Shown here: positions 21,650 to 56,803 of the stretch, piece by piece
Numbering within the stretch: position 1 is the first letter of the stretch
Layout: each line of letters begins with the position of its first letter
Source of the DNA: Oikopleura dioica
Taxonomy: Eukaryota > Animalia > Chordata
Length of the DNA: 64,000 nucleotides
Direction: 5' to 3'
NCBI GenBank assembly: GCA_907165135.1
Contig: OU015569.1
Location: 3,100,001 to 3,164,000 of the forward strand
Made by a program: the position numbers and the translations under genes
Notes under the pieces: model-generated
Databases searched by the model: none
What the model saw: only the letters and a program-made list of their open reading frames with translations
What the model was told of the DNA's origin: nothing

Positions 21650-24307
21650 ATGGCACTGACAGAATGCAAGGAAGAGAGAACCAACTCCGCAGGTTTTGTC
21701 ATTTCGTCAATTAAGGATCTCCACGGTCGATTTTTCCCCGAGAATCTTTTGCTTCGAGCTCCAATGAATTACTGTGAAAGAGATCCTTAAAGTAGAGCAA
21801 GTTTGTTGACTCTCGGAAAGAAAGCAATCTCACCCTTACCGACACAATCATCCAGAAGTATTGCGACCTGCACGTATTATTCAGTGAGGGCGAAGATCTG
21901 ATCCCGACTCCTCCTGAGGATCTTTTTTACTCCGTTTTGTACATTGTACTCTTCATTGTTGGCTTCTTGGCGAATATAATCGTTATTGTAACTCTAGGAT
22001 CGTTCTTAACTTGCGCTAAAAAGGTGAAATCAGCGACAGTTACAGAGCTTTTACAGTGAATCACCGCCATGTTCTTATTACTTCCGCTCATCTCTACGTT
22101 CTTCATCTTTCAATAGCCGATTTTATTTTCCTTCTGAATATACCCCTAGCCACGTTTTCTCTCAGTTAAACTCTCAAAACTGGCGTAATAAGAGGGGTTG
22201 AAAACGCATTCAAGTTATCCACTCCAGCCGCCTCCATCCCGAACAGTGGCCTTTTCGAGGAATTATAGGGGAAGTGCTTTGCTACGTTCATCGCTCCGCT
22301 GCCACCATCAATTTCATCGTTTCAATTGGCTTGCTCACAACTCTCGCTGTTGATCGATACTTAGGTTGGTTAAAACGACGATAAACCGCAATGCCCAACA
22401 TTTTGATAATTTTTTAATTAGTGCTCGTGAAGAATGCGTGGAAAACGGTCAGGATAAGAGTTGGAGATGTTCACTGCTTCGGTAAATTACTTGTGCGAAA
22501 CCAATACCGCTATTTATACCTGTATTCTGGTATTTGAGTTTGATAGATTTCTGATGTCATAAATCTATTCGCTACATATCCGATATGTTATTTTGAAAGG
22601 GTGTTCGTAGTAAACAAAAACGTTAAAAAAAACTAATACTCTCAGCTTGTGACAGAACGAAGTCCCGTCCACCAATGCTCGCCCATCTCTATGTTGCGGG
22701 AATTTGGCTCTTTAGGTCTTGGTTCACACTTTTCAACAGATAAACTCCTTTGAAAAGGCACACAAAGTGACCCACAATCAGTTTGCTTCTGGCCACCCCC
22801 AACATGATGGCAACTAGCTACAGTGAAACAAACGATACCGCCAAGTGCTCCGTAAATTGGACTCTTATGGACGCATGGCTCCCTGAGTATCCAAAGAACT
22901 CAGAGCTCGCGCTTGAAACTCAAGGAAATGTCTCCTTCTACGTCTACGATGATGAAAGTCTTTACCTGCAGAATCTCACTCACGAGGATCCACTTTACTT
23001 TGGATTTTCCGATTTGGGGTCTTTCGGCAACGAAAGTGATCTTCTTGAAATGTTCGGTGGAACGACAGAGGAAGAGAACGAACTGCTCGAAGAGGCTGGC
23101 TGGATAAATAACACTGATAGGTGTCGGGAATTCATCAAACAAGCGAATGAGCAATACGAGGTACTAGAACTGTTATCAGATCCGGGGCGGAAAAGGTTAA
23201 TAACTCAGGGACTCGTTAATGAAGAAAGGTTAAGAAGCGAATATACATCGGAATGACCTTTTAAAAACTAAAGCATAAAAACATCATAAACTAGTAATAC
23301 TTAGTACTTAGAAATTCTAAAAAAATCAAATAAAAATGCATAAACTCGATATTTAGAATTCAATATCCGACGCTCAAATGTACCACCTCGAGCAAACTTA
23401 CAGCTACTGCTCAGTGCCAGAGCCACGATCAAGAAAAATTGTAAGTAAAAAAATGCTACTTTCCATCATAACAATCTCCTGTCTGCAGTGGCTGTGGGTA
23501 CTCTTTATCAGCTGCTGCGTAATTCCTGCATTCGTGATGATCTTCTGCTACACGCGATTCTGGTTCCGCGTGAAAAAAGTAACACGGGATGTGCAAAACT
23601 TTCAAAATTCGAAGCGACGAAACAAGATGGATTCAACGAGGAGACTCGCTATTCTAGTGGCAGTGTTGTGCAGTTCATTTTTCCTGTGCTGGGAATGGAT
23701 TTCGGAATTCTAAGAACCAATCAATTAAAAATTTTATTTTCAAATCGAAATCCATCAGACTCCATTTCACGTGTTTCACATTTTTCGAGCAACTGGAATC
23801 AGCGTCAACAGTACAACTTGCGCAACTCTTCGCGATGTCCTCTCAACGATGGCCTACGTAAACGCCTGCCTCAATCCTATTCTTTACTCTGTAAGAAATT
23901 TTCTCGTTGACTGGCCAAATTTTGAGCCTTTTAGTTTATCGGAGCTCGTTTCCGCGACCGCGCAAGATCCGTTCTGTTGGAAAAACCACTCCAGCTCAAG
24001 AGAAAGATGAGCACGAACATTTCTGAGGGCAACACGCAACTAACTCGCTTTTCATCAAATCGAGCATCTTTTGCCTACAACTCAAGCAGGCTTTCAGACT
24101 CCTCGAGGGCTTCGGTCAGTGATTTTTGCAAACCTTTTTTCTATAAATTATTTTTAGAGCGAGTCTTCAAACAGTAAAGCTTTTCAAAAAGGGTCGAAAT
24201 CGACGGCTTTCCGTTCAAAATCCGTTCCGATTCCCGAAGAAACATCCCTTCTCGGAGAAATTTATGAGAATTCCTCGGCTGGCAATCTTCCTCGTTCTTC
24301 TCAATAA
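21650..24307 (+). CDS. Rhodopsin-family peptide GPCR (somatostatin/galanin/opioid-like) with very long ECL2
   Basis: GFLANIIV (TM1), LSIADF (TM2), LAVDRY (TM3), CW|TPFH (TM6), NACLNPILY (TM7). Confidence 0.9.
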
Positions 24308-24368
24308 AAATGAACACTTCTCAAAATAAAATATTCAAAGCAAAATCAGATCAATGATATCAGTTTAT

Positions 24369-25588
24369 TCAAGACTCTGGAAGAAAGAGATTAGATAGTT
24401 GGTCGTGTATGTCAGGGGAAATGGAACCTTTGGCGGAGTCAGACTGAGGGACCGGTTCCCGATCCAGCTGATTTTCAGGGAAATTCGAAAAAGTGGGGAC
24501 TTCGGGAAGTAGAAATCTCGGAGGCTCTCTCTCTGGTATGTTTGTACCCTTGTTATGCTTTTGGAACTTGGTTTGAGTTTGTGCATCCTTTTTATTCTTT
24601 GGTATCTTGTAGTTCTTTGTTCTTATCAAGACTTCTTTGAAGCTGTCGATATCGTCGAACTTGATGATTTGCAGCAATATCGTCGAAAGTTGATCCCTGG
24701 TGATGTTCAATCGGTCGTAAAAGTACTCTGTCAGGGTCAAGAGAAATTCGATCAAGTCGGGCTTGTATAGAAGGTCCAAGTTTTCTTCTTCCGATCCAAG
24801 AATTTCGATAATTTCATCGTCAACATCGCACGCGCCGACGTACATCCAAGTTAGGAGAGAGATCATCTGCGGGAATGCCTTGTCGAAAAATAACGAGAAA
24901 TGTTTTCTGCTAATTCGACTTGTACCGAGAGTATTCTTCCTGTAGTTTTCGTCACATTGGAGGGAGTGGGCAATGAAGTTCCGCATGAATCTGACGAAAT
25001 CCACGAGTGAATGCTCATCTAAGTGAGCTGTATCATTCTAAAGGCGTAAGTAAAGAATAGGGAAGAAGAACGAATGCAACTAACCTTGTGTTCTTCCATG
25101 TAACCCCTAAGCTGAGGATGGTCCTTCCAACTGGTTGTTGGTTCAGGCCAGGCCAAAGGAGGATGATCTGGTATTGGAATAAGACTTGTTGATTCCCGTA
25201 TAATGAGCTCCGTGAATCTGGGCGACGTAAGAATTGCACGTAGAATTTGGAACTTTTGTTTTCGCGAGTCTCCCTCAAACACTTGGTTCAGCTTGGCTCT
25301 CTGCAGTTCATTGTTGAAGTTGTCCATGCACATCATCTTTATCGACGGGTAAACAGCATTAAAAACTTTATCAGGATTGCGCTCGTGGGTCATCTGGGGC
25401 AAAATTAGTTACCATCCATGTTCTAGGATAATTACCTGTAACTTGTGCCTGAGCAAATCTTTTGCTCTCAAACTGCTCAAGGAGGGAGTTCTTTGTGGTG
25501 GTAGATGAATATCTTCAGCGATTTCCATCCCATTGAAGAGATTATCATTGATATCTTCCAGCAGGTTATTATCATTGTTGTCTTCCAT
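24369..25588 (-). CDS. Stand-alone KEN (IRE1/RNase L-type ribonuclease) domain protein, about 376 aa; exons 25588-25436, 25393-25085, 25037-24369
   Basis: SWKDH...SLVDFVRFMRNFIAH...TLG...FSLFFDKAFPQMI matches the KEN core (IRE1 SVRDLLRAMRNKKHH...TLG...FVCYFTSRFPHL; RNase L GDLLKFIRNLGEH...YFQKTFPDL). No kinase motifs in the gene. Confidence 0.7.
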
Positions 25589-26082
25589 TATTCTCTTGTA
25601 TCAGCTACTGTTTGCCTGATGGAAATATATCAAAAAGTGACGAATGTGTTGTTTGACTTTTCCCACGAATAGTAATTTTGCTCACAATGACTCGTGCGCG
25701 CAAAAAAGATAAAAACGAACGTACGTATGTTTTTCTTGTTCTGAAAATTTTTTCAGTAAAACGGAAGTGGTGACTAAAAATGAATAGCGCTGCTCTTTAT
25801 GCAATCGACGATGTCGCCCTTCCAAAAAAAAACACCGACAAGTAAGTTGTTTTCTCAGGTGAAACACTGTCAGAATTTAGGGCAGCGTTGATTTATGATC
25901 GCAATCGCAAAACCAGCCGAGCACGAAACTATCCCTATTTGGGAACCCTCAAGAAGTGTATTCTCAGCAAACATTCGCTAGACACGGTGCATGCACAAAT
26001 CGTGAGATAATCTTATTTATTTCCTTCCACCAGGGAAAATGTAGTTACTCTTTGTACAACAAAGGTGTTTGAAAGCACATCT

Positions 26083-27224
26083 TCATATTCTTCTGGACCT
26101 GCCATAGATGCACTTGTCGATTTCTTGACTAACAGCCTCTTCGTGCAGCCCCGAGAAGGCGTTGATGCAGCGGCCGTCTTGGAAGATCCTGAACGTCGGA
26201 GTGCCGCGCACGTCCTCATCCCACAAGATCCTTCCGAGTCCCTTATTGAGTTGAGTTACGAGCACGTTCTAAAGTTCAACCCTTTCCTACCCTCTCGTCA
26301 CAGTCGATTAACACCATGTCAAGCTTGTCATAGTAGCGCGTGTTGAGTTGCTCGAGCTCGGGGAGAATCCGCTGACTGATCAAAGCAGATCCAAAAGATC
26401 AATTCAAAGATACGGTTCATAAAGCGCTAATGACGCCCTAAATCAACCTTGATTACTTACTCAAGTTGATTTAGTACGTTAATCTTTTTGGACCTGTAAC
26501 AGAACAGACACTGTTTTGAGAAAAAAACTGCCACGGAAAGTCGACCCATTTGGACCATTTCGGTAAACTCGTCTTCGGTTTTTATTCTTCGGATCTTTTT
26601 CGTGGCGATTTCGCCTCCGTTGACCGTGGGTTTGTACTGTTATTTGCTCTATAAAATGGAAAATCAGGGATTTTACCGCTTGCTTTGAGCAATGTCCTGT
26701 TGAACGAAATGTCGGAGTCTTGTCTCGTTTGTTCCGATGATTGAAACAAGCTAAAAAGTAAAATTTACCTGGAAAGTTCTTTTATACTTTTTTCTTACTT
26801 CTAGTCCGCTTTGGTAAAAAGAAACAGTTGGATAAGTTCGGACTTCTTCGTTCAACGCAACTTTTCTCAGCGCGTAATCGTCTGTGTCGACTCTTTTAGA
26901 ATATTATTTCGAGATTGAATCTTTGAAAAGTAAAAACCTGATGAAGCGCGCGTGACCGCGAAATTCAAGCGCGACGGATTTGAAGATGCTCTCGTAATAT
27001 CTGCACGGATTGAACATCGAATCCGTAAAGAAGCAAACTGTCAAACCGCCGCTTGTGATTCTCTCTCTGAAATGCTCTGCATTTTCGATGTTTTCAACGG
27101 CCGAGACGGGCTTCTGGAAGCTCTCCGCGCTGGGAAATTGATTGAGGGACAAGGACGCCTTGGCATTAGCCTTCTCGAAGCGTGCGAGGTAAGATGGGTT
27201 TATGTACGGCCCGCGTACTACCAT
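26083..27224 (-). CDS. Two-domain thioredoxin-like protein
   Basis: Domain 1 LTVCFFTDSMFNPC...EVRTYPTVSFYQSG; domain 2 LSVAVFFSKQCLFC...EDVRGTPTFRIFQDG (cis-Pro motif). Needs one GA-AG intron. Confidence 0.8.
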
Positions 27225-27674: not shown

Positions 27675-30600
27675 TTATTTTCTGACACAATAATCAGCAG
27701 GTGCTTCCAAAAGAACGGGAATTTCATTTATAACGGCGTGGCTGATTACTGTTGCTTGTATCAACTCGTCTCCATGAAAATCGAGTCGTTCAATAGAATG
27801 TGGACTTTCGTAGCCAGAAACGATGAAGATTGAATTGTTAATCATTATTACAGATCCTGAATCATTCGCCTAAATTTTAATTAGCCTTATAATCAGCTAA
27901 TTTTTGAAACTCACGTTTTCAAGATTGCCAATCTGAGTCCACAGGTCATTTTTAAGAAGCCAGATTGCAGTTTGTGGAACATCATCTTTATCTAGTCCCC
28001 CAGCAAGCAAAAGGCTTCCACTTGGAAGGCCGATCAAAAAGTGATGGGCGATTTCACTGAGAAAAAAAAAATTCAAAAAAGAACAAAAATGTTTAATTAC
28101 CTTGGAAAATCGCCTAAAAACGACCAGCCAGAAGAACTGAGTGTCTCAACTTTATTCTGCCCTTCCCAGGAGTAACTTCCAACTGTCGTTGGTTGTCCTT
28201 TGTACAGCCCTAGCTTTCCACCGTCATGTTGAAAATTGGCTTCATGCGCCGAGACTGTTGATGTTCCATCGAAAAGTTCACATTTTTTATTCGACTTCAT
28301 GTCAAAACAAATCAATGCTTCTTCGCCACCGGCCGTCGAAAGTGCTGCAGACCAAGGGTAAATTTCATTGATCAACCTTGTGGGTTCTTCTTTCCATTCA
28401 CAATTTTCTAATTTGGCGATCTGAACATTAAAAATTAGTTTCATAGAAGATTGAATAAAATAACCTTCGATACGTCCGGCCATCCACCAAAAATAAAAAC
28501 TACTCCGTTGACAAGAGCATGAGTAGGTGTAATGGTAGAAAAATCGACCCCGTGATCGCCTTTTCTAAACTTCTTTTTTGATGCAGAATAAGAATCGTTA
28601 GGTCGCGGCGATCATTTCGATACCAAATCCATGAAAATCCGACTTGGTTTTCGGCATAAAGGTACCATTTGAAGTCCAAAAATGAGCACTAGAAATCTTC
28701 TACCGCCCGGAAAGGGATGAATACTCCAGCCTATCAGTACATGCCTAGTTCCAGATTGTAGAGCATATTCAATTCTATCAGAATCTATTCTCAGATGTTG
28801 TGAACAGAGGCTCTTGTGAGAACCATCGCCCGAAGAAGCTCGAAAAACGATGCAAAATTGAGGCGAAATCGTTAGTCTGAGTTCACGGGAGCCAAATTTG
28901 GCTTTGATTTTGCCCAATTTTTTGACCTTCTTCGGGCGCTGGTTCTCACTAGAGCCCCTGTTCACAACTTCTGATGACAGATTCTGGTAGAATGGAGCCT
29001 GCTCTACAATCTTGAATTAGGAACGTACTGATAAGCTGGAGTATTCATCCCTTTCCGGGCGCTAGAAAATTTCTAGTGCTCTTTTTTGGACTTCAAATGG
29101 TACTTCTATGCCGAAAACCAAGTTTTTGATGAATTTGGTATCAAAATGATCGTCACGACCCAGAGATTCTTATTCTGCATCAAAAAAGATGTTTAGAAGA
29201 GGTGATCGTGGGGTTGATTTTTCTATCATTACACCTAAGCATGAGGAGCAAATTGAACATAGTCGTCTGATGGTGCACTGATTACTGATGCTGCTTTGGT
29301 TGCTCCGTCAAATGAAATTGAGAATGCTTCGCTCAATTTTTCGCCCATTATCAAAATCACTAAATAAAATGGTTGAATATCGTTAATTTTGAATTGCAAT
29401 CTACCTCTTTCTTCTGAAGCTTCCTCTTGGGCACGGACGGACAAGTTGGGTTCGGTGACCGGTCGGACTCCGGTCCAAGGTCTGCGCCGCTCCGATCCAT
29501 CGCATGGAACGCTTTGTGTTTCGGAATTCGTTGAACATTCTTCGTGTCGAGTTCTTGATTTGAAACCGTCAATGCATTCACTCCAGGAGGACCTAAAAGA
29601 TTAGATATTCGCAATAAAAAGATCATAATTTGCTTACCATACTCCAATCTCACTAATAAAAGCAAGGGTCACAAAGTTGTTGCACTCTTCTTCCTCAACG
29701 TCTTCTTCGTCGCAGTTAGTTCTTCGCCTGTACTTCTTGGCATTACCGCAGCTGCTACTACAAGGAGTCCATTCCGACCAGTCAGTGAAGATGCCGTTAT
29801 TGCCGACGTTACAAGATTCGCGTTCACTGTTGCTTCCAAAAAGATTCAAGCACTCATCTGGAGATCCCTCGCACTGGCGGAATCGTTCGCGGAATCCGAT
29901 GCCACAAGAGGTAGAACAAGATCCCCAATCGGTCCATTGCGACCAATACGCGATGCAATAAGGTGCTATGCAAGGTCTTTGTTGCTTGTCTACGCGGTGA
30001 GTACAGATTTCAGAGCGTTGGCGGGATGATAGAACTGGCTCATCATTTTGATTATAGCAGCTGAAATAATTCTTTAAAATCTTACTTCAAACGATAATTT
30101 ACCTTGGGCAGGCGGACCAGTGGGACCATGACGAGTAATTTATAGGATTTATGCAGCTATCAGTCTCGATGTCAACGTGTCCGCCGCAGATTCGTCTCCG
30201 TTCTCGACTTCTTGAACCGTAGCCACAAGATGCCGAGCATTCCGACCAAGCGGTCCAATAAGTGTATCCAGGATCGATTGCTGTGCAGCGAGAGAATTCA
30301 TATGGTAAACCAGGGCAAGAATGGCCATACTGACAATCGCGCCGTCGAGATCGGTTTCCCTGGCCGCAGCTTGCATCACAGGCTGACCAGGTTGACCAGG
30401 TTGTCCATTCAGGACAGCTCCCAAAATTGCAACTCTTAATTTTCAAAGTAGGTTTAAAGATGAGAAACCCTTTTTACTTGCTCGTAGATGCTTTCGCCAA
30501 AACATTCATATTCGCGGTAATAGTCTTCTCCGATGCATTCTCGTTGTTTTTGGCGAAATCCAGGGCCACAGGTTGTTGAGCAAGGGCTCAACGGAGACCA

Positions 30601-54933: not shown

Positions 54934-56803
54934 TCAAAAGAGTCGATTCAATATCTCGTGATCCTCTTTTTCCTCGAGAAATATGCTTTTCAAGGCAGCC
55001 TAGAAAAAAAGATTCAAGCTAAAGTTTCTCTAGATTTTAAAGCAGTACCTGTTCTTTCAGAAGCGAGGCCTTGATTCTCAATTTGTTATTTGTGTTGAGC
55101 AGGAATTTCACGGTTTCCAGAAGCTCAGGACCAACGATCTGAATTATTCAATGCGATGGAAAATAATTATAATCCGCACGTGTGCTTACACTCGGGTCGA
55201 CAGCTAAGCTGCCGTTTTTCACATTTTCCGCTACATTCAGGCCGTACGGTTGGAGCCCAGTGAATACATACAGGAAAAGGCATCCCACCAAAAACATGTC
55301 AGAGGATTTATCAGCATTCTGAGGCTAGGGGATATCTCAACTTGGATGAAGCTGCACAATATGATTCTCAACAAGTCACTCTCCTAGACTGTCCTTGGAA
55401 CTTCCGTTGACTATTTCCGGCACAGGCCATTCATCGTTTGCACCACGGGAAAAGAGCCTTTCTAGGCCGTAGTCACTGAGTTGAATTTTGAACTCGCCAG
55501 GAGTGTGAGTGGATTTGTACAGCACATTTGACGGGCGTAAGTTACCATGCGTCAGGCCTTGCCCATGAAGATAGGCGATACCGGAGGAGATCTGTTGGCA
55601 GACTTCGAGGCGTGCTGTATCGGAATCATTGTATTCGCTGGATACCCAATCCGTAAGATTTCCATCGTACCACTCGGTTGCCACGAAGATTGATAGCCCT
55701 TCTGTCCAAGAATCAAGAATTGGTGACACATAAATATGATCTGAGCGGATAAAGATACCAGCTTGTGCTGATCAGTGTTTGAAAAAATGGTCAAAGCTCT
55801 TGTGAGTGAGCGAGCGCGAGCAGACACTCTTCAATTTTTTTCTTAAGTGAGTGAGCGTGAGCGCAGACCCGAAATATTTTTAATGAGTGAGCGAGCAAGA
55901 GCGCTCGCTCGCTCGCTCGCGCTCGCTCGCAGCTTTTCGGGGGCCTTTCTAGCGAGAATTTCCTTGAGAATTATCATAATTGTAATTTTTAACGCATAAT
56001 TTAATATAGAAAGACAATGACGGGCATTATAACGCGATTAAAAGAGAAATTTCTCAAATATCGTAATACTCTGTCTCCAGGGTGTATTAATTAATAATGA
56101 CTGTTGGCAAGCGCGAGTGAGCGGGAGCGGCGGCCCGGAATTTTATGGTGAGCGAGTGAGCATGAGCGCTCGCTCACTCGCTCGCGCTCGCTCGTGGCTC
56201 GCGCTCACCATTTTTTCAAACTCTGGTGCTGATTTAGATTCTTGATGTCTAGTTTTTATGGAAAGTTTGTATCCAGGCCTAAGTTTTTAGAAAGAAGACG
56301 TTGAATACCGTGTTGAACTACAGTAACATCGGCGTCGTCTCGGAGCTTATATTTCTTATACTTCGGGTAGAAAGTCTGTCTGAAAATTTTGCCTGAAACG
56401 GTAGACTAGGAGATGCTATGTCTGACGAAAGGAAAGTAGTTTATACTGTATAATTTATACAGTATAAATTACACAGTAGTTCTAAATTATATACACTCTC
56501 AATCTCATATTTTCCATGACTGGTGAGCGCTACAGCTCCTCGAGTCAGGAGGTTTTGTAATAACAGTTTATATAAACGATATTGATCGAGGCTGGTTCTA
56601 ATTAGAATGTATTTGCAAATTTATGTTTATTTATGTGACTAACTAGAAGTTCCGATTGCATTAATCATAAATTCTTGACTACCCTCTTCCTTGACAGCTG
56701 TGCAAGTTCTACGCGGTCCCCTTGTCGTCTGATAAATTGCACCCCAGATGCCGGCCTTGAGAGGGTTCTTTGAAAGGTTGTCTCTATCTACGACGACTGC
56801 CAT
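54934..56803 (-). CDS. IRE1-like pseudokinase without KEN domain, interrupted by a MITE; 5' end uncertain
   Basis: DDADVTVVQH, RSDHIYV, QQISSGIAYLH, HGNLRPSNVL, IQLSDYGL, WPVPE, DMFLVGCLFLYVFTG.QPYG. Stop follows about 20 aa after the kinase fold. Confidence 0.7.
55773..56225. mobile_element. 453-bp hAT-like MITE (C) with 19-bp TIRs and 8-bp TSD
   Basis: cagtgtttgaaaaaatggt ... accattttttcaaactctg; TSD gtgctgat at 55765-55772 and 56226-56233; subterminal gagtgagcgagc repeats. Confidence 0.95.

What the first reader, a model, noticed from the sequence alone, without database searches (positions are those of the whole stretch)
24369..25588. Stand-alone KEN (IRE1/RNase L-type) ribonuclease with an intact RNxxxH motif
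Seen: a 3-exon, about 376-aa gene containing SLVDFVRFMRNFIAH (RNFIAH at 24966-24983), followed by TLG and F..FF...FPQM, with no kinase, TM, luminal or ankyrin sequence. Known: KEN domains of IRE1 and RNase L use this R-N-x3-H (HEPN-like) site and are normally fused to a (pseudo)kinase that drives dimerisation. Inference: a kinase-free endoribonuclease activated some other way, for example through its unique C-terminal helical extension or a partner, possibly in RNA decay or antiviral defence.
Basis: partly seen in the sequence, partly recalled or inferred. Interest (0 to 1): 0.8.

Follow-up and report, generated by a model that had tools for sequence, protein, structure and literature searches.

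The report
Kinase-less KEN ribonuclease gene, Oikopleura
This is a real three-exon gene of the tunicate Oikopleura dioica for a 376-residue protein built around the RNA-cutting (KEN) domain of IRE1/RNase L without any kinase, but such stand-alone KEN genes were already reported in this animal in 2013, so it is a further member of a known, still untested, family.

Summary
It encodes 376 aa, identical to the public Oikopleura dioica protein P0001. RNFIAH lies at 24983-24966.

The KEN reading also holds:
- Pfam Ribonuc_2-5A scores just under the cut-off (21.9 vs 23.3 bits). The closest relative, P0002, passes at 42.7 bits.
- An AlphaFold model matches the KEN domains of yeast Ire1 (Z 9.3) and RNase L (Z 6.4) above every other solved chain.
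- There is no kinase, transmembrane or ankyrin sequence. All three frames are closed just upstream of the ATG.
- Wild marine-metagenome copies differ from the KEN core by 16 synonymous changes and 1 conservative replacement, so the gene is under purifying selection.

It is not new as a kind. Anantharaman et al. 2013 reported "solo" KEN genes expanded in Oikopleura. This scan has also met the family four times on other DNA of this genome.

New details found here:
- This copy alone has lost the catalytic tyrosine (Leu160 at the place of yeast Y1043).
- The subfamily shares a conserved C-terminal two-helix plus hairpin module of about 55 residues.
- Relatives exist only as 12 short marine sequences among 1.84 billion representatives.

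The parts
25436..25588 (-). Exon 1 (codons 1-51): acidic, predicted disordered N-terminus, then the start of a helix
   Evidence: Translation, identical to P0001. pLDDT is below 50 for residues 1-36. The intron position is shared with the Bergen-lineage relative, where P0005 reads through that intron.
25394..25435 (-). Intron 1, 42 nt, GT..AG
   Evidence: Read from the sequence. Removing it keeps the frame and gives P0001.
25085..25393 (-). Exon 2 (codons 52-154): N-terminal helices and the first half of the KEN-like fold
   Evidence: Translation. Four synonymous and no replacement differences against the Tara metagenome contigs L013/L014.
25038..25084 (-). Intron 2, 47 nt, GT..AG
   Evidence: Read from the sequence. 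7 of 47 positions differ in L013/L014, against about 3% in the flanking exons.
24369..25037 (-). Exon 3 (codons 155-376 plus TGA): catalytic helix, rest of the KEN fold, C-terminal module, disordered tail
   Evidence: Translation. Pfam PF06479 matches residues 155-214 of P0001.
24792..25438 (-). Residues 51-236: the part of the model that superposes on the KEN domains of Ire1 and RNase L (intron 2 lies inside this span)
   Evidence: VIA-align: 3fbv_A Z 9.3, 140 residues aligned, model 51-236 on chain 974-1115. 4o1o_A Z 6.4, model 41-237 on chain 571-729. The first 49 Foldseek rows shown are all IRE1.
24966..24983 (-). R173-N174-F-I-A-H178: the R-N-x3-H (HEPN Rx4-6H) catalytic motif
   Evidence: Sequence. 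Aligned to RNKYHH of yeast Ire1. R, N and H are invariant in alignment A1.
25020..25022 (-). Codon of Leu160, at the position of the catalytic tyrosine of Ire1 (yeast Y1043)
   Evidence: The profile-to-PDB alignment puts yeast Y1043 on this column. Alignment A2 shows Y in P0002, P0003, L004, L005, P0008, P0012, P0013, the O. dioica IRE1 (L001) and L002, but not here. No replacement at this codon in L013/L014.
24615..24779 (-). Residues 241-295: subfamily-conserved C-terminal module (two helices plus a beta-hairpin)
   Evidence: Conserved in A1, A2 and A3. Modelled with pLDDT about 90 in the full model and 79.5 alone. No convincing structural match: best Z 4.4.
24372..24599 (-). Residues 301-376: lysine-rich then proline/acidic tail, predicted disordered, absent from the relatives
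   Evidence: pLDDT 32-41. Relatives end near column 450 of A2.
24364..24369 (-). AATAAA overlapping the last base of the stop codon: likely polyadenylation signal
   Evidence: Read from the sequence. Inference only.
25589..25618 (-). Short leader: a possible 3' splice or trans-splice acceptor (pyrimidine run then CAG at 25618-25616), followed by stops in all three frames before the ATG
   Evidence: Read from the sequence: TGA at 25603-25601 in the frame of the ATG, and TAA and TAG in the other two frames. The acceptor is inference.

Best explanation
The gene encodes a soluble, kinase-free protein whose core (residues about 51-236) is a divergent KEN domain, the HEPN-type metal-independent endoribonuclease domain of IRE1 and RNase L. 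It belongs to the lineage-specific expansion of 'solo' KEN genes of Oikopleura dioica.

Inferred mechanism:
- The protein probably dimerises, as KEN and other HEPN domains do, to form its RNA-cleaving site from R173, N174 and H178. Cleavage would leave a 2',3'-cyclic phosphate.
- With no kinase to drive self-association, that role would fall to the KEN-KEN surface, the subfamily-specific N-terminal helices (37-88) and the conserved C-terminal two-helix plus hairpin module (241-295).
- This copy has replaced the tyrosine that partners the histidine in Ire1. Its catalysis is therefore expected to be weaker or altered compared with its paralogues.

Shown here: the gene structure, the KEN fold, the motif, the absence of a kinase, purifying selection, and family membership.

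Inferred only: RNase activity, dimerisation, and a role in RNA decay or in defence or genetic conflict.
For: - Gene model and identity with P0001.
- Pfam PF06479: 21.9 bits, E 2e-4 for P0001; 42.7 bits, E 7e-11 for the nearest relative P0002. Paralogue ORFs score 24.3 and 21.7 bits.
- The family profile finds only Ire1 chains in the PDB (E 0.004), with R-N-x3-H aligned.
- AlphaFold model: core mostly at pLDDT above 80.
- VIA-align against 48,161 chains: Ire1 Z 9.3 and RNase L Z 6.4, then a drop to 4.7.
- The first 49 Foldseek rows shown are all IRE1, with probabilities of 0.80-1.00.
- The ESM Atlas top cluster is kinase/Ribonuc_2-5A.
- No kinase. Pfam finds none in the protein or in neighbouring ORFs. 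A tblastx of the genome's own IRE1 loci against the window hits only 55520-55627, 30 kb away. Frames are closed upstream of the ATG.
- Purifying selection. In exon 2 plus the covered part of exon 3, wild contigs L013/L014 differ by 16 synonymous changes and 1 replacement (E232D). Intron 2 differs at 7 of 47 positions.
- Prior literature: solo KEN expansion in O. dioica (PMC3710099).
Against: - P0001 itself is below Pfam's gathering score (21.9 vs 23.3). Foldseek E-values are only about 0.05.
- The catalytic Tyr is missing, replaced by L160. In yeast Ire1, Y1043F lowers k2 about tenfold and weakens RNA binding (PMC3149027).
- No assay, no dimer model and no partner is known.
- In IRE1 and RNase L the nuclease is switched on by kinase-domain-driven dimerisation, and the kinase domain is absent here.
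Confidence: 0.72

Rival explanations
1. It is a catalytically dead or strongly attenuated KEN protein. It would act by binding RNA, or by pairing with active KEN proteins (the solo paralogues, the kinase-KEN protein or IRE1) as a regulator or decoy.
For: It is the only family member without the tyrosine equivalent to yeast Y1043. It has the weakest Pfam score of the subfamily together with L005. It is nevertheless under strong purifying selection, so it does something. HEPN families are known to include non-catalytic RNA binders (PMC3710099).
Against: R173, N174 and H178 are all kept. In yeast Ire1 the histidine contributes more than 10^5-fold, whereas Y1043F costs only about tenfold (PMC3149027). 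Loss of Tyr alone therefore does not predict an inactive enzyme.
Confidence: 0.25
2. It is the 3' end of a longer kinase-KEN gene whose upstream exons were missed.
For: IRE1 and at least one other gene of this genome (L002) do join a kinase to KEN. A kinase-like ORF lies on the same strand at 55376-55729.
Against: - The kinase-like ORF is 30 kb away, with other ORFs on both strands in between.
- All three frames carry stops between the only plausible upstream acceptor and the ATG.
- The public annotation starts at the same ATG.
- The relatives P0002 and P0003 are complete 276-278-aa proteins, and the paralogues are single ORFs without a kinase.
- No kinase similarity was found within the neighbouring 30 kb.
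Confidence: 0.02
3. It is a decaying or non-functional duplicate (pseudogene in the making), or a chance resemblance to KEN.
For: Sub-threshold Pfam score. Only 41-46% identity to the nearest relative, with no nucleotide-level match to it. Lost Tyr.
Against: The 376-codon frame is intact with canonical splice sites. The 16:1 ratio of synonymous to replacement differences in the KEN core against wild contigs is not what a pseudogene shows. Fold, profile and motif agree with one another.
Confidence: 0.02

Closest known systems
Solo KEN ('solo RNase L') lineage-specific expansion of Oikopleura dioica (Anantharaman, Makarova, Burroughs, Koonin, Aravind 2013, Biol Direct 8:15)
   Same: Same organism and same architecture: a KEN domain without the N-terminal kinase, present in several paralogous copies. 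This genome has seven KEN matches, and at least this gene and the C1 tandem pair have no kinase. The nearest relative, P0002, is already labelled 'KEN domain-containing protein'.
   Different: The paper was based on the North Atlantic assembly and gives no per-gene description. This Okinawa-lineage copy is not labelled with any domain in the database. It lacks the catalytic Tyr, carries an extra disordered tail of about 75 residues, and lies on the X-specific contig rather than where P0002's neighbours map.
IRE1 (kinase/endoribonuclease of the unfolded-protein response), KEN domain
   Same: Best structural match (Z 9.3, 140 residues). The R-N-x3-H helix and the following F..YF...FP.L helix align.
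   Different: No luminal sensor, transmembrane segment or kinase. About 15-18% identity in structural alignments. The equivalent of Tyr Y1043 is Leu. There are added N-terminal helices and a C-terminal module. The genome has a separate bona fide IRE1-type KEN (L001, 100 bits).
RNase L (2-5A-dependent ribonuclease)
   Same: Second-best structural match, on its KEN domain (Z 6.4, 135 residues). It is soluble and cytosolic, like this protein.
   Different: No ankyrin repeats and no pseudokinase, so there is no 2-5A sensing module.
Solo KEN expansion of monocot plants (same 2013 paper)
   Same: An independent case of KEN genes separated from the kinase and multiplied.
   Different: Unrelated lineage. 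Not examined here.

Membership tests
KEN domain (Pfam PF06479 Ribonuc_2-5A) | Profile match at or above Pfam's gathering score (23.3 bits) | tested here: not met
   P0001 scores 21.9 bits, E 2e-4, profile positions 52-107 of 127. Its nearest relative P0002 scores 42.7 bits and paralogue L004 scores 24.3 bits. The family passes; this member falls 1.4 bits short.
KEN domain (Pfam PF06479 Ribonuc_2-5A) | All-helical KEN fold | tested here: met
   The predicted model superposes on yeast Ire1 KEN (974-1115) at Z 9.3, rmsd 3.2, 140 residues, and on RNase L KEN at Z 6.4. The next chain scores 4.7. The Foldseek and Atlas top hits are IRE1/KEN. This is a prediction, not a solved structure.
KEN domain (Pfam PF06479 Ribonuc_2-5A) | Catalytic R-N-x3-H on the central helix | tested here: met
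   R173, N174 and H178 are aligned to RNKYHH of yeast Ire1 and invariant in A1.
KEN domain (Pfam PF06479 Ribonuc_2-5A) | Catalytic tyrosine 12-13 residues before the Arg (yeast Y1043, partner of H1061) | tested here: not met
   Leu160 and Asp161 occupy these positions, and there is no Tyr between residues 150 and 172. All ten other sequences covering the site have Tyr.
KEN domain (Pfam PF06479 Ribonuc_2-5A) | Placed directly after a protein kinase or pseudokinase domain (the 'kinase-extension' of the name) | tested here: not met
   No kinase in the protein, in neighbouring ORFs or by tblastx. This is the defining difference of the 'solo KEN' group.
KEN domain (Pfam PF06479 Ribonuc_2-5A) | Metal-independent endoribonuclease activity dependent on the His | not testable with these tools
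   Needs purified protein and an H178 mutant control.
HEPN superfamily | Rx4-6H motif on a helix of a four-helix core | tested here: met
   R173-x4-H178 lies in helix 165-179 of the model. KEN was placed in HEPN by PMC3710099.
Oikopleura solo-KEN subfamily (this gene, P0002, C1 tandem pair, P0003 cluster) | Colinear similarity over about 230 residues, including the A-C-D-x2-D-E stretch after the KEN core and the C-terminal F-D..G-N-F hairpin | tested here: met
   A1 has 39 invariant columns from D44 to F287. The genome search with P0001 finds the C1 pair at E 1e-20 over residues 57-289. The exhaustive profile search finds only 12 relatives.

The most novel reading that the evidence does not exclude
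The solo-KEN subfamily may be a self-contained ribonuclease system. In it, the conserved C-terminal two-helix plus hairpin module (with the N-terminal helices) would replace the kinase as the dimerisation or activation switch. This X-linked, Tyr-less, fast-diverging copy would be a specialised partner, either a modulator or an altered-specificity subunit, that heterodimerises with Tyr-bearing paralogues. The system would act in an RNA-level defence or genetic-conflict pathway peculiar to appendicularians.
Probability: 0.12. Interest if true: 0.6.

Novelty: new member of a known kind. Interest (0 to 1): 0.3.

Why it matters
Every KEN nuclease studied so far is switched on by a fused kinase or pseudokinase, so a naturally kinase-free KEN protein under purifying selection is a simple test case. 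It could show whether the domain can work alone and, if so, what replaces the kinase. That question has been open since the solo KEN genes were noticed in 2013, and none has been tested at the bench.

This copy adds three concrete handles:
- a natural Tyr-to-Leu variant of the active site;
- a conserved C-terminal module that is a candidate switch;
- evidence of selection from wild populations.

It does not change the picture of what exists. The kind is published, and this scan has already met it four times in this genome.

Tried and rejected
- **PDB by sequence.** Single-sequence searches with exon 3, exon 2 and P0001 found nothing useful. Only the family profile reached Ire1.
- **Profile-profile comparison.** Comparing the family (A1) with the genome's own IRE1 and kinase-KEN ORFs (A4) aligned only the 54 columns around the catalytic helices (E 4e-4, probability 35%). 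This gave no support for my idea that residues 37-88 are a remnant of a kinase C-lobe, and I dropped it.
- **C-terminal module.** In the whole-model search it looked winged-helix-like (Z 3.3-3.9). Modelled alone, its best match was Z 4.4 to a 72-residue ribosome-bound chain, barely above the background of 3.0-3.8. The fold assignment is inconclusive, and I do not call it a winged helix.
- **ESM Atlas feature search.** It gave no usable hit, and the Atlas's own model of this protein is poor (pLDDT 0.36).
- **Look-up of P0001 on other contigs.** Nothing was on record.
- **'Split kinase-RNase' idea.** Its PDB matches are generic kinases, with IRE1 no better than TYK2, EGFR or CDPK. It lies 30 kb away and nothing links it to this gene. 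This is not supported, though not excluded.
- **Bacterial promoter/terminator scan.** Irrelevant for a eukaryote; I ignored it.
- **Strict orthology of P0002.** It is the reciprocal best hit, but its neighbours map to contig C4 and not C2. I therefore call it the closest relative only.

Full report
**1. What is in the sequence**

The region holds a minus-strand gene with these parts:
- The ATG is at 25588.
- Exon 1 is 25588-25436 (51 codons).
- Intron 1 is a 42-nt GT..AG intron at 25435-25394.
- Exon 2 is 25393-25085 (103 codons).
- Intron 2 is a 47-nt GT..AG intron at 25084-25038.
- Exon 3 is 25037-24369 (222 codons plus TGA).

AATAAA overlaps the last base of the stop codon (24369-24364).

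I searched the model exon by exon, by reference. The word search with exon 3 returned the public 376-aa protein P0001. This is Oikopleura dioica, assembly OKI2018_I69, 'XSR', g14115.t1, and it is letter for letter the sum of the three exon translations. All later whole-protein work used that database record. I did not type or submit a joined exon model to any search tool. In one search a script indexed the coding positions of window.fa, only to classify differences as synonymous or not.

SLVDFVRFM precedes it. TLG and the F..FF...FPQM stretch follow it.

**2. Is it a KEN domain?**

Four independent lines agree.

Profile evidence:
- Pfam Ribonuc_2-5A (PF06479) matches residues 155-214 at 21.9 bits, E 2e-4. 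That is 1.4 bits under the curated cut-off.
- The nearest relative, P0002 (278 aa, O. dioica, named 'KEN domain-containing protein' by UniProt), passes at 42.7 bits, E 7e-11.
- A profile of four family members finds only Ire1 chains in the PDB (E 0.004). R-N-x3-H and the following FP helix are aligned.

Structural evidence:
- An AlphaFold2 model built on a 26-row family alignment has a confident core. Most of residues 60-295 are above pLDDT 80, and residues 1-36 and 305-376 are disordered.
- In an all-against-representatives structural search, the two best of 48,161 chains are yeast Ire1 and RNase L. Ire1 scores Z 9.3 (rmsd 3.2, 140 residues, model 51-236 on chain 974-1115, the KEN domain). 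RNase L scores Z 6.4, also on its KEN domain. The next chain scores 4.7.
- The first 49 Foldseek rows shown are all IRE1 structures (E about 0.05, probability 0.80-1.00).
- The ESM Atlas shape search puts a kinase/Ribonuc_2-5A cluster first.

The domain assignment is therefore sound, although this member is very divergent (about 15-18% identity to Ire1 in structural alignments).

**3. Is a kinase attached?**

No.
- Pfam finds no kinase, ankyrin or other domain in P0001.
- The highest 19-residue hydropathy mean is 1.08, so there is no membrane segment.
- Upstream of the ATG, a pyrimidine run ending in CAG (25618-25616) could be a splice or trans-splice acceptor. TGA, TAA and TAG close all three frames between it and the ATG, so no upstream coding exon can be read into this ORF through it.
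- ORFs on both strands in the next 5 kb have no kinase match.
- A tblastx of this genome's own IRE1 and kinase-KEN loci against the whole window hits only 55520-55627, 30 kb away.
- The relatives P0002 and P0003 are complete proteins of 276-278 aa. The two paralogues on contig C1 are single ORFs of about 300 aa without a kinase.

Direct transcript evidence could not be obtained.

**4. The family**

The genome has seven PF06479 matches:
- a bona fide IRE1-type KEN (L001, 100 bits);
- a KEN preceded by a kinase C-lobe in the same ORF (L002);
- two exon-sized matches (L003, L006);
- a tandem pair on C1 (L004/L005);
- this gene.

All keep R-N-x3-H.

This gene, P0002, the C1 pair and the P0003 cluster form a subfamily that is colinear over about 230 residues (39 invariant columns in A1). 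Shared features include an A-C-D-x2-D-E stretch just after the KEN core and a C-terminal module of about 55 residues.

An exhaustive HMMER search of 1.84 billion representatives with the subfamily profile found only 12 proteins at E <= 1e-3. All are 70-278 aa. Those looked up come from marine metagenome or sequencing-run assemblies, and several are exon fragments called on genomic contigs. The subfamily is therefore narrow and fast-evolving.

P0002 is the reciprocal best hit of this gene at 41-46% identity. Its neighbours in the Bergen assembly match contig C4 of this genome at 67-78% nucleotide identity, while the KEN gene itself has no nucleotide match. So it is either a relocated, very fast-evolving orthologue or a paralogue with reciprocal loss. 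The Okinawa lineage split from the others about 25 Mya (PMC11067885).

**5. Is the gene functional?**

Two Tara Oceans metagenome contigs (L013, L014) carry a wild copy 97% identical over 25583-24720.
- In exon 2 plus the covered part of exon 3 (627 nt, the KEN core) there are 16 synonymous differences and one conservative replacement (E232D).
- Intron 2 differs at 7 of 47 positions.
- The disordered exon 1 has two replacements.

This pattern confirms the frame and the intron boundaries. It shows strong purifying selection, with dN/dS roughly 0.02 by a simple site count of mine.

**6. The active site is not quite intact**

Yeast Ire1 uses H1061 with Y1043 as an acid-base pair, and R1056 and N1057 to hold the phosphate. 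H1061 contributes more than 10^5-fold. Y1043F costs about tenfold in k2 and weakens RNA binding (PMC3149027).

In the profile alignment, Y1043 falls on Leu160 of this protein. There is no Tyr between residues 150 and 172. All ten other sequences that cover the site keep the tyrosine: P0002, P0003, L004, L005, P0008, P0012, P0013, and the genome's own IRE1 (L001) and L002. The wild contigs show no replacement there.

The enzyme may therefore be slower or altered, or the protein may have become a binder or regulator. Because R, N and H are kept and the core is constrained, I still rate an active though modified RNase as somewhat more likely than a dead one.

**7. The extensions**

- Residues 37-88 are two long helices before the KEN core. 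I found no support that they are a kinase remnant.
- Residues 241-295 form two helices plus a hairpin, conserved across the subfamily and confidently modelled. Their structural matches are weak and mixed (Z <= 4.4), so the fold is unassigned.
- Residues 301-376 are a lysine-rich then proline/acidic tail. It is disordered and absent from the relatives, which end in short basic tails.

Since IRE1 and RNase L need kinase-driven dimerisation to switch on the nuclease (established knowledge), the N-terminal helices and the C-terminal module are the obvious candidates for that role here. This is inference.

**8. Comparison with what is known, and novelty**

Anantharaman et al. 2013 placed KEN in the HEPN superfamily. 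[quoted passage not shown] I found no later paper on these genes.

This scan has already met the family four times on other DNA of this genome: the C1 tandem pair, two further solo genes, and a kinase-KEN gene. Those follow-ups gave the same verdict.

The present gene is thus a new member of a known kind. It has some features of its own: loss of the Tyr, the extra tail, and its location on the X-specific contig C2 together with IRE1 and L002.

**9. Verdict**

- Observation: confirmed.
- Interpretation: partly supported. The solo KEN reading is right. 'Intact' is overstated and the novelty is not upheld.
- Interest: modest (0.3). The biological question of how a KEN nuclease works without a kinase is real and testable with this protein, but it is not a new discovery.

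Noticed in passing
G000 contig C2: window 24369-25588; L001 (C2:7261587-7261949); L002 (C2:7601309-7601605): The IRE1-type gene, a kinase-KEN gene and this solo KEN gene all lie on the same 12.96-Mb contig. The public name of P0001 calls that contig XSR (X-specific region).
   Followed up: no
L012 (Bergen assembly FN654276.1) versus G000 contig C4: The genes flanking the closest relative P0002 (a 505-aa gene, CKS, NAAA-like, carbohydrate kinase) match contig C4 of this genome at 67-78% nucleotide identity. The KEN gene has no nucleotide match, and its only protein-level counterpart is on C2. The KEN gene has therefore moved, or been duplicated and lost, between lineages.
   Followed up: partly
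window 55376-55729 (-): A kinase-like ORF with HGNLRPSN in place of the HRDLKPxN catalytic loop, so a likely pseudokinase. Its PDB matches are generic kinases (TYK2, EGFR, CDPK and IRE1 at E from 1.5e-8 to about 1e-6), so 'IRE1-like' is not established.
   Followed up: partly
window about 55810-55930 and 56100-56220: GAGCGAGC-rich self-complementary repeats next to the kinase-like ORF. They look like a hairpin-forming repeat or a small transposon insertion.
   Followed up: no
window 23378-24010 (+): Terminal exons of a rhodopsin-family GPCR (Pfam 7tm_1, with an NPxxY-like NPILY). They converge on the 3' end of the KEN gene, and the two polyadenylation signals are only about 60 bp apart.
   Followed up: partly
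window 29634-30446 (-): ORFs with thrombospondin type-1 repeat signatures (WSxW..C..SCG). This looks like the next minus-strand gene upstream.
   Followed up: no
P0012, P0013, P0025 (marine metagenome and run assemblies): More distant relatives of the solo-KEN subfamily that carry R-D-x3-H instead of R-N-x3-H while keeping the tyrosine. They are probably from other appendicularians.
   Followed up: no
window 25780-26343 (+): A divergently oriented ORF series starts with an ATG 190 bp upstream of the KEN gene's ATG. It has no Pfam match, and its gene model was not worked out.
   Followed up: partly
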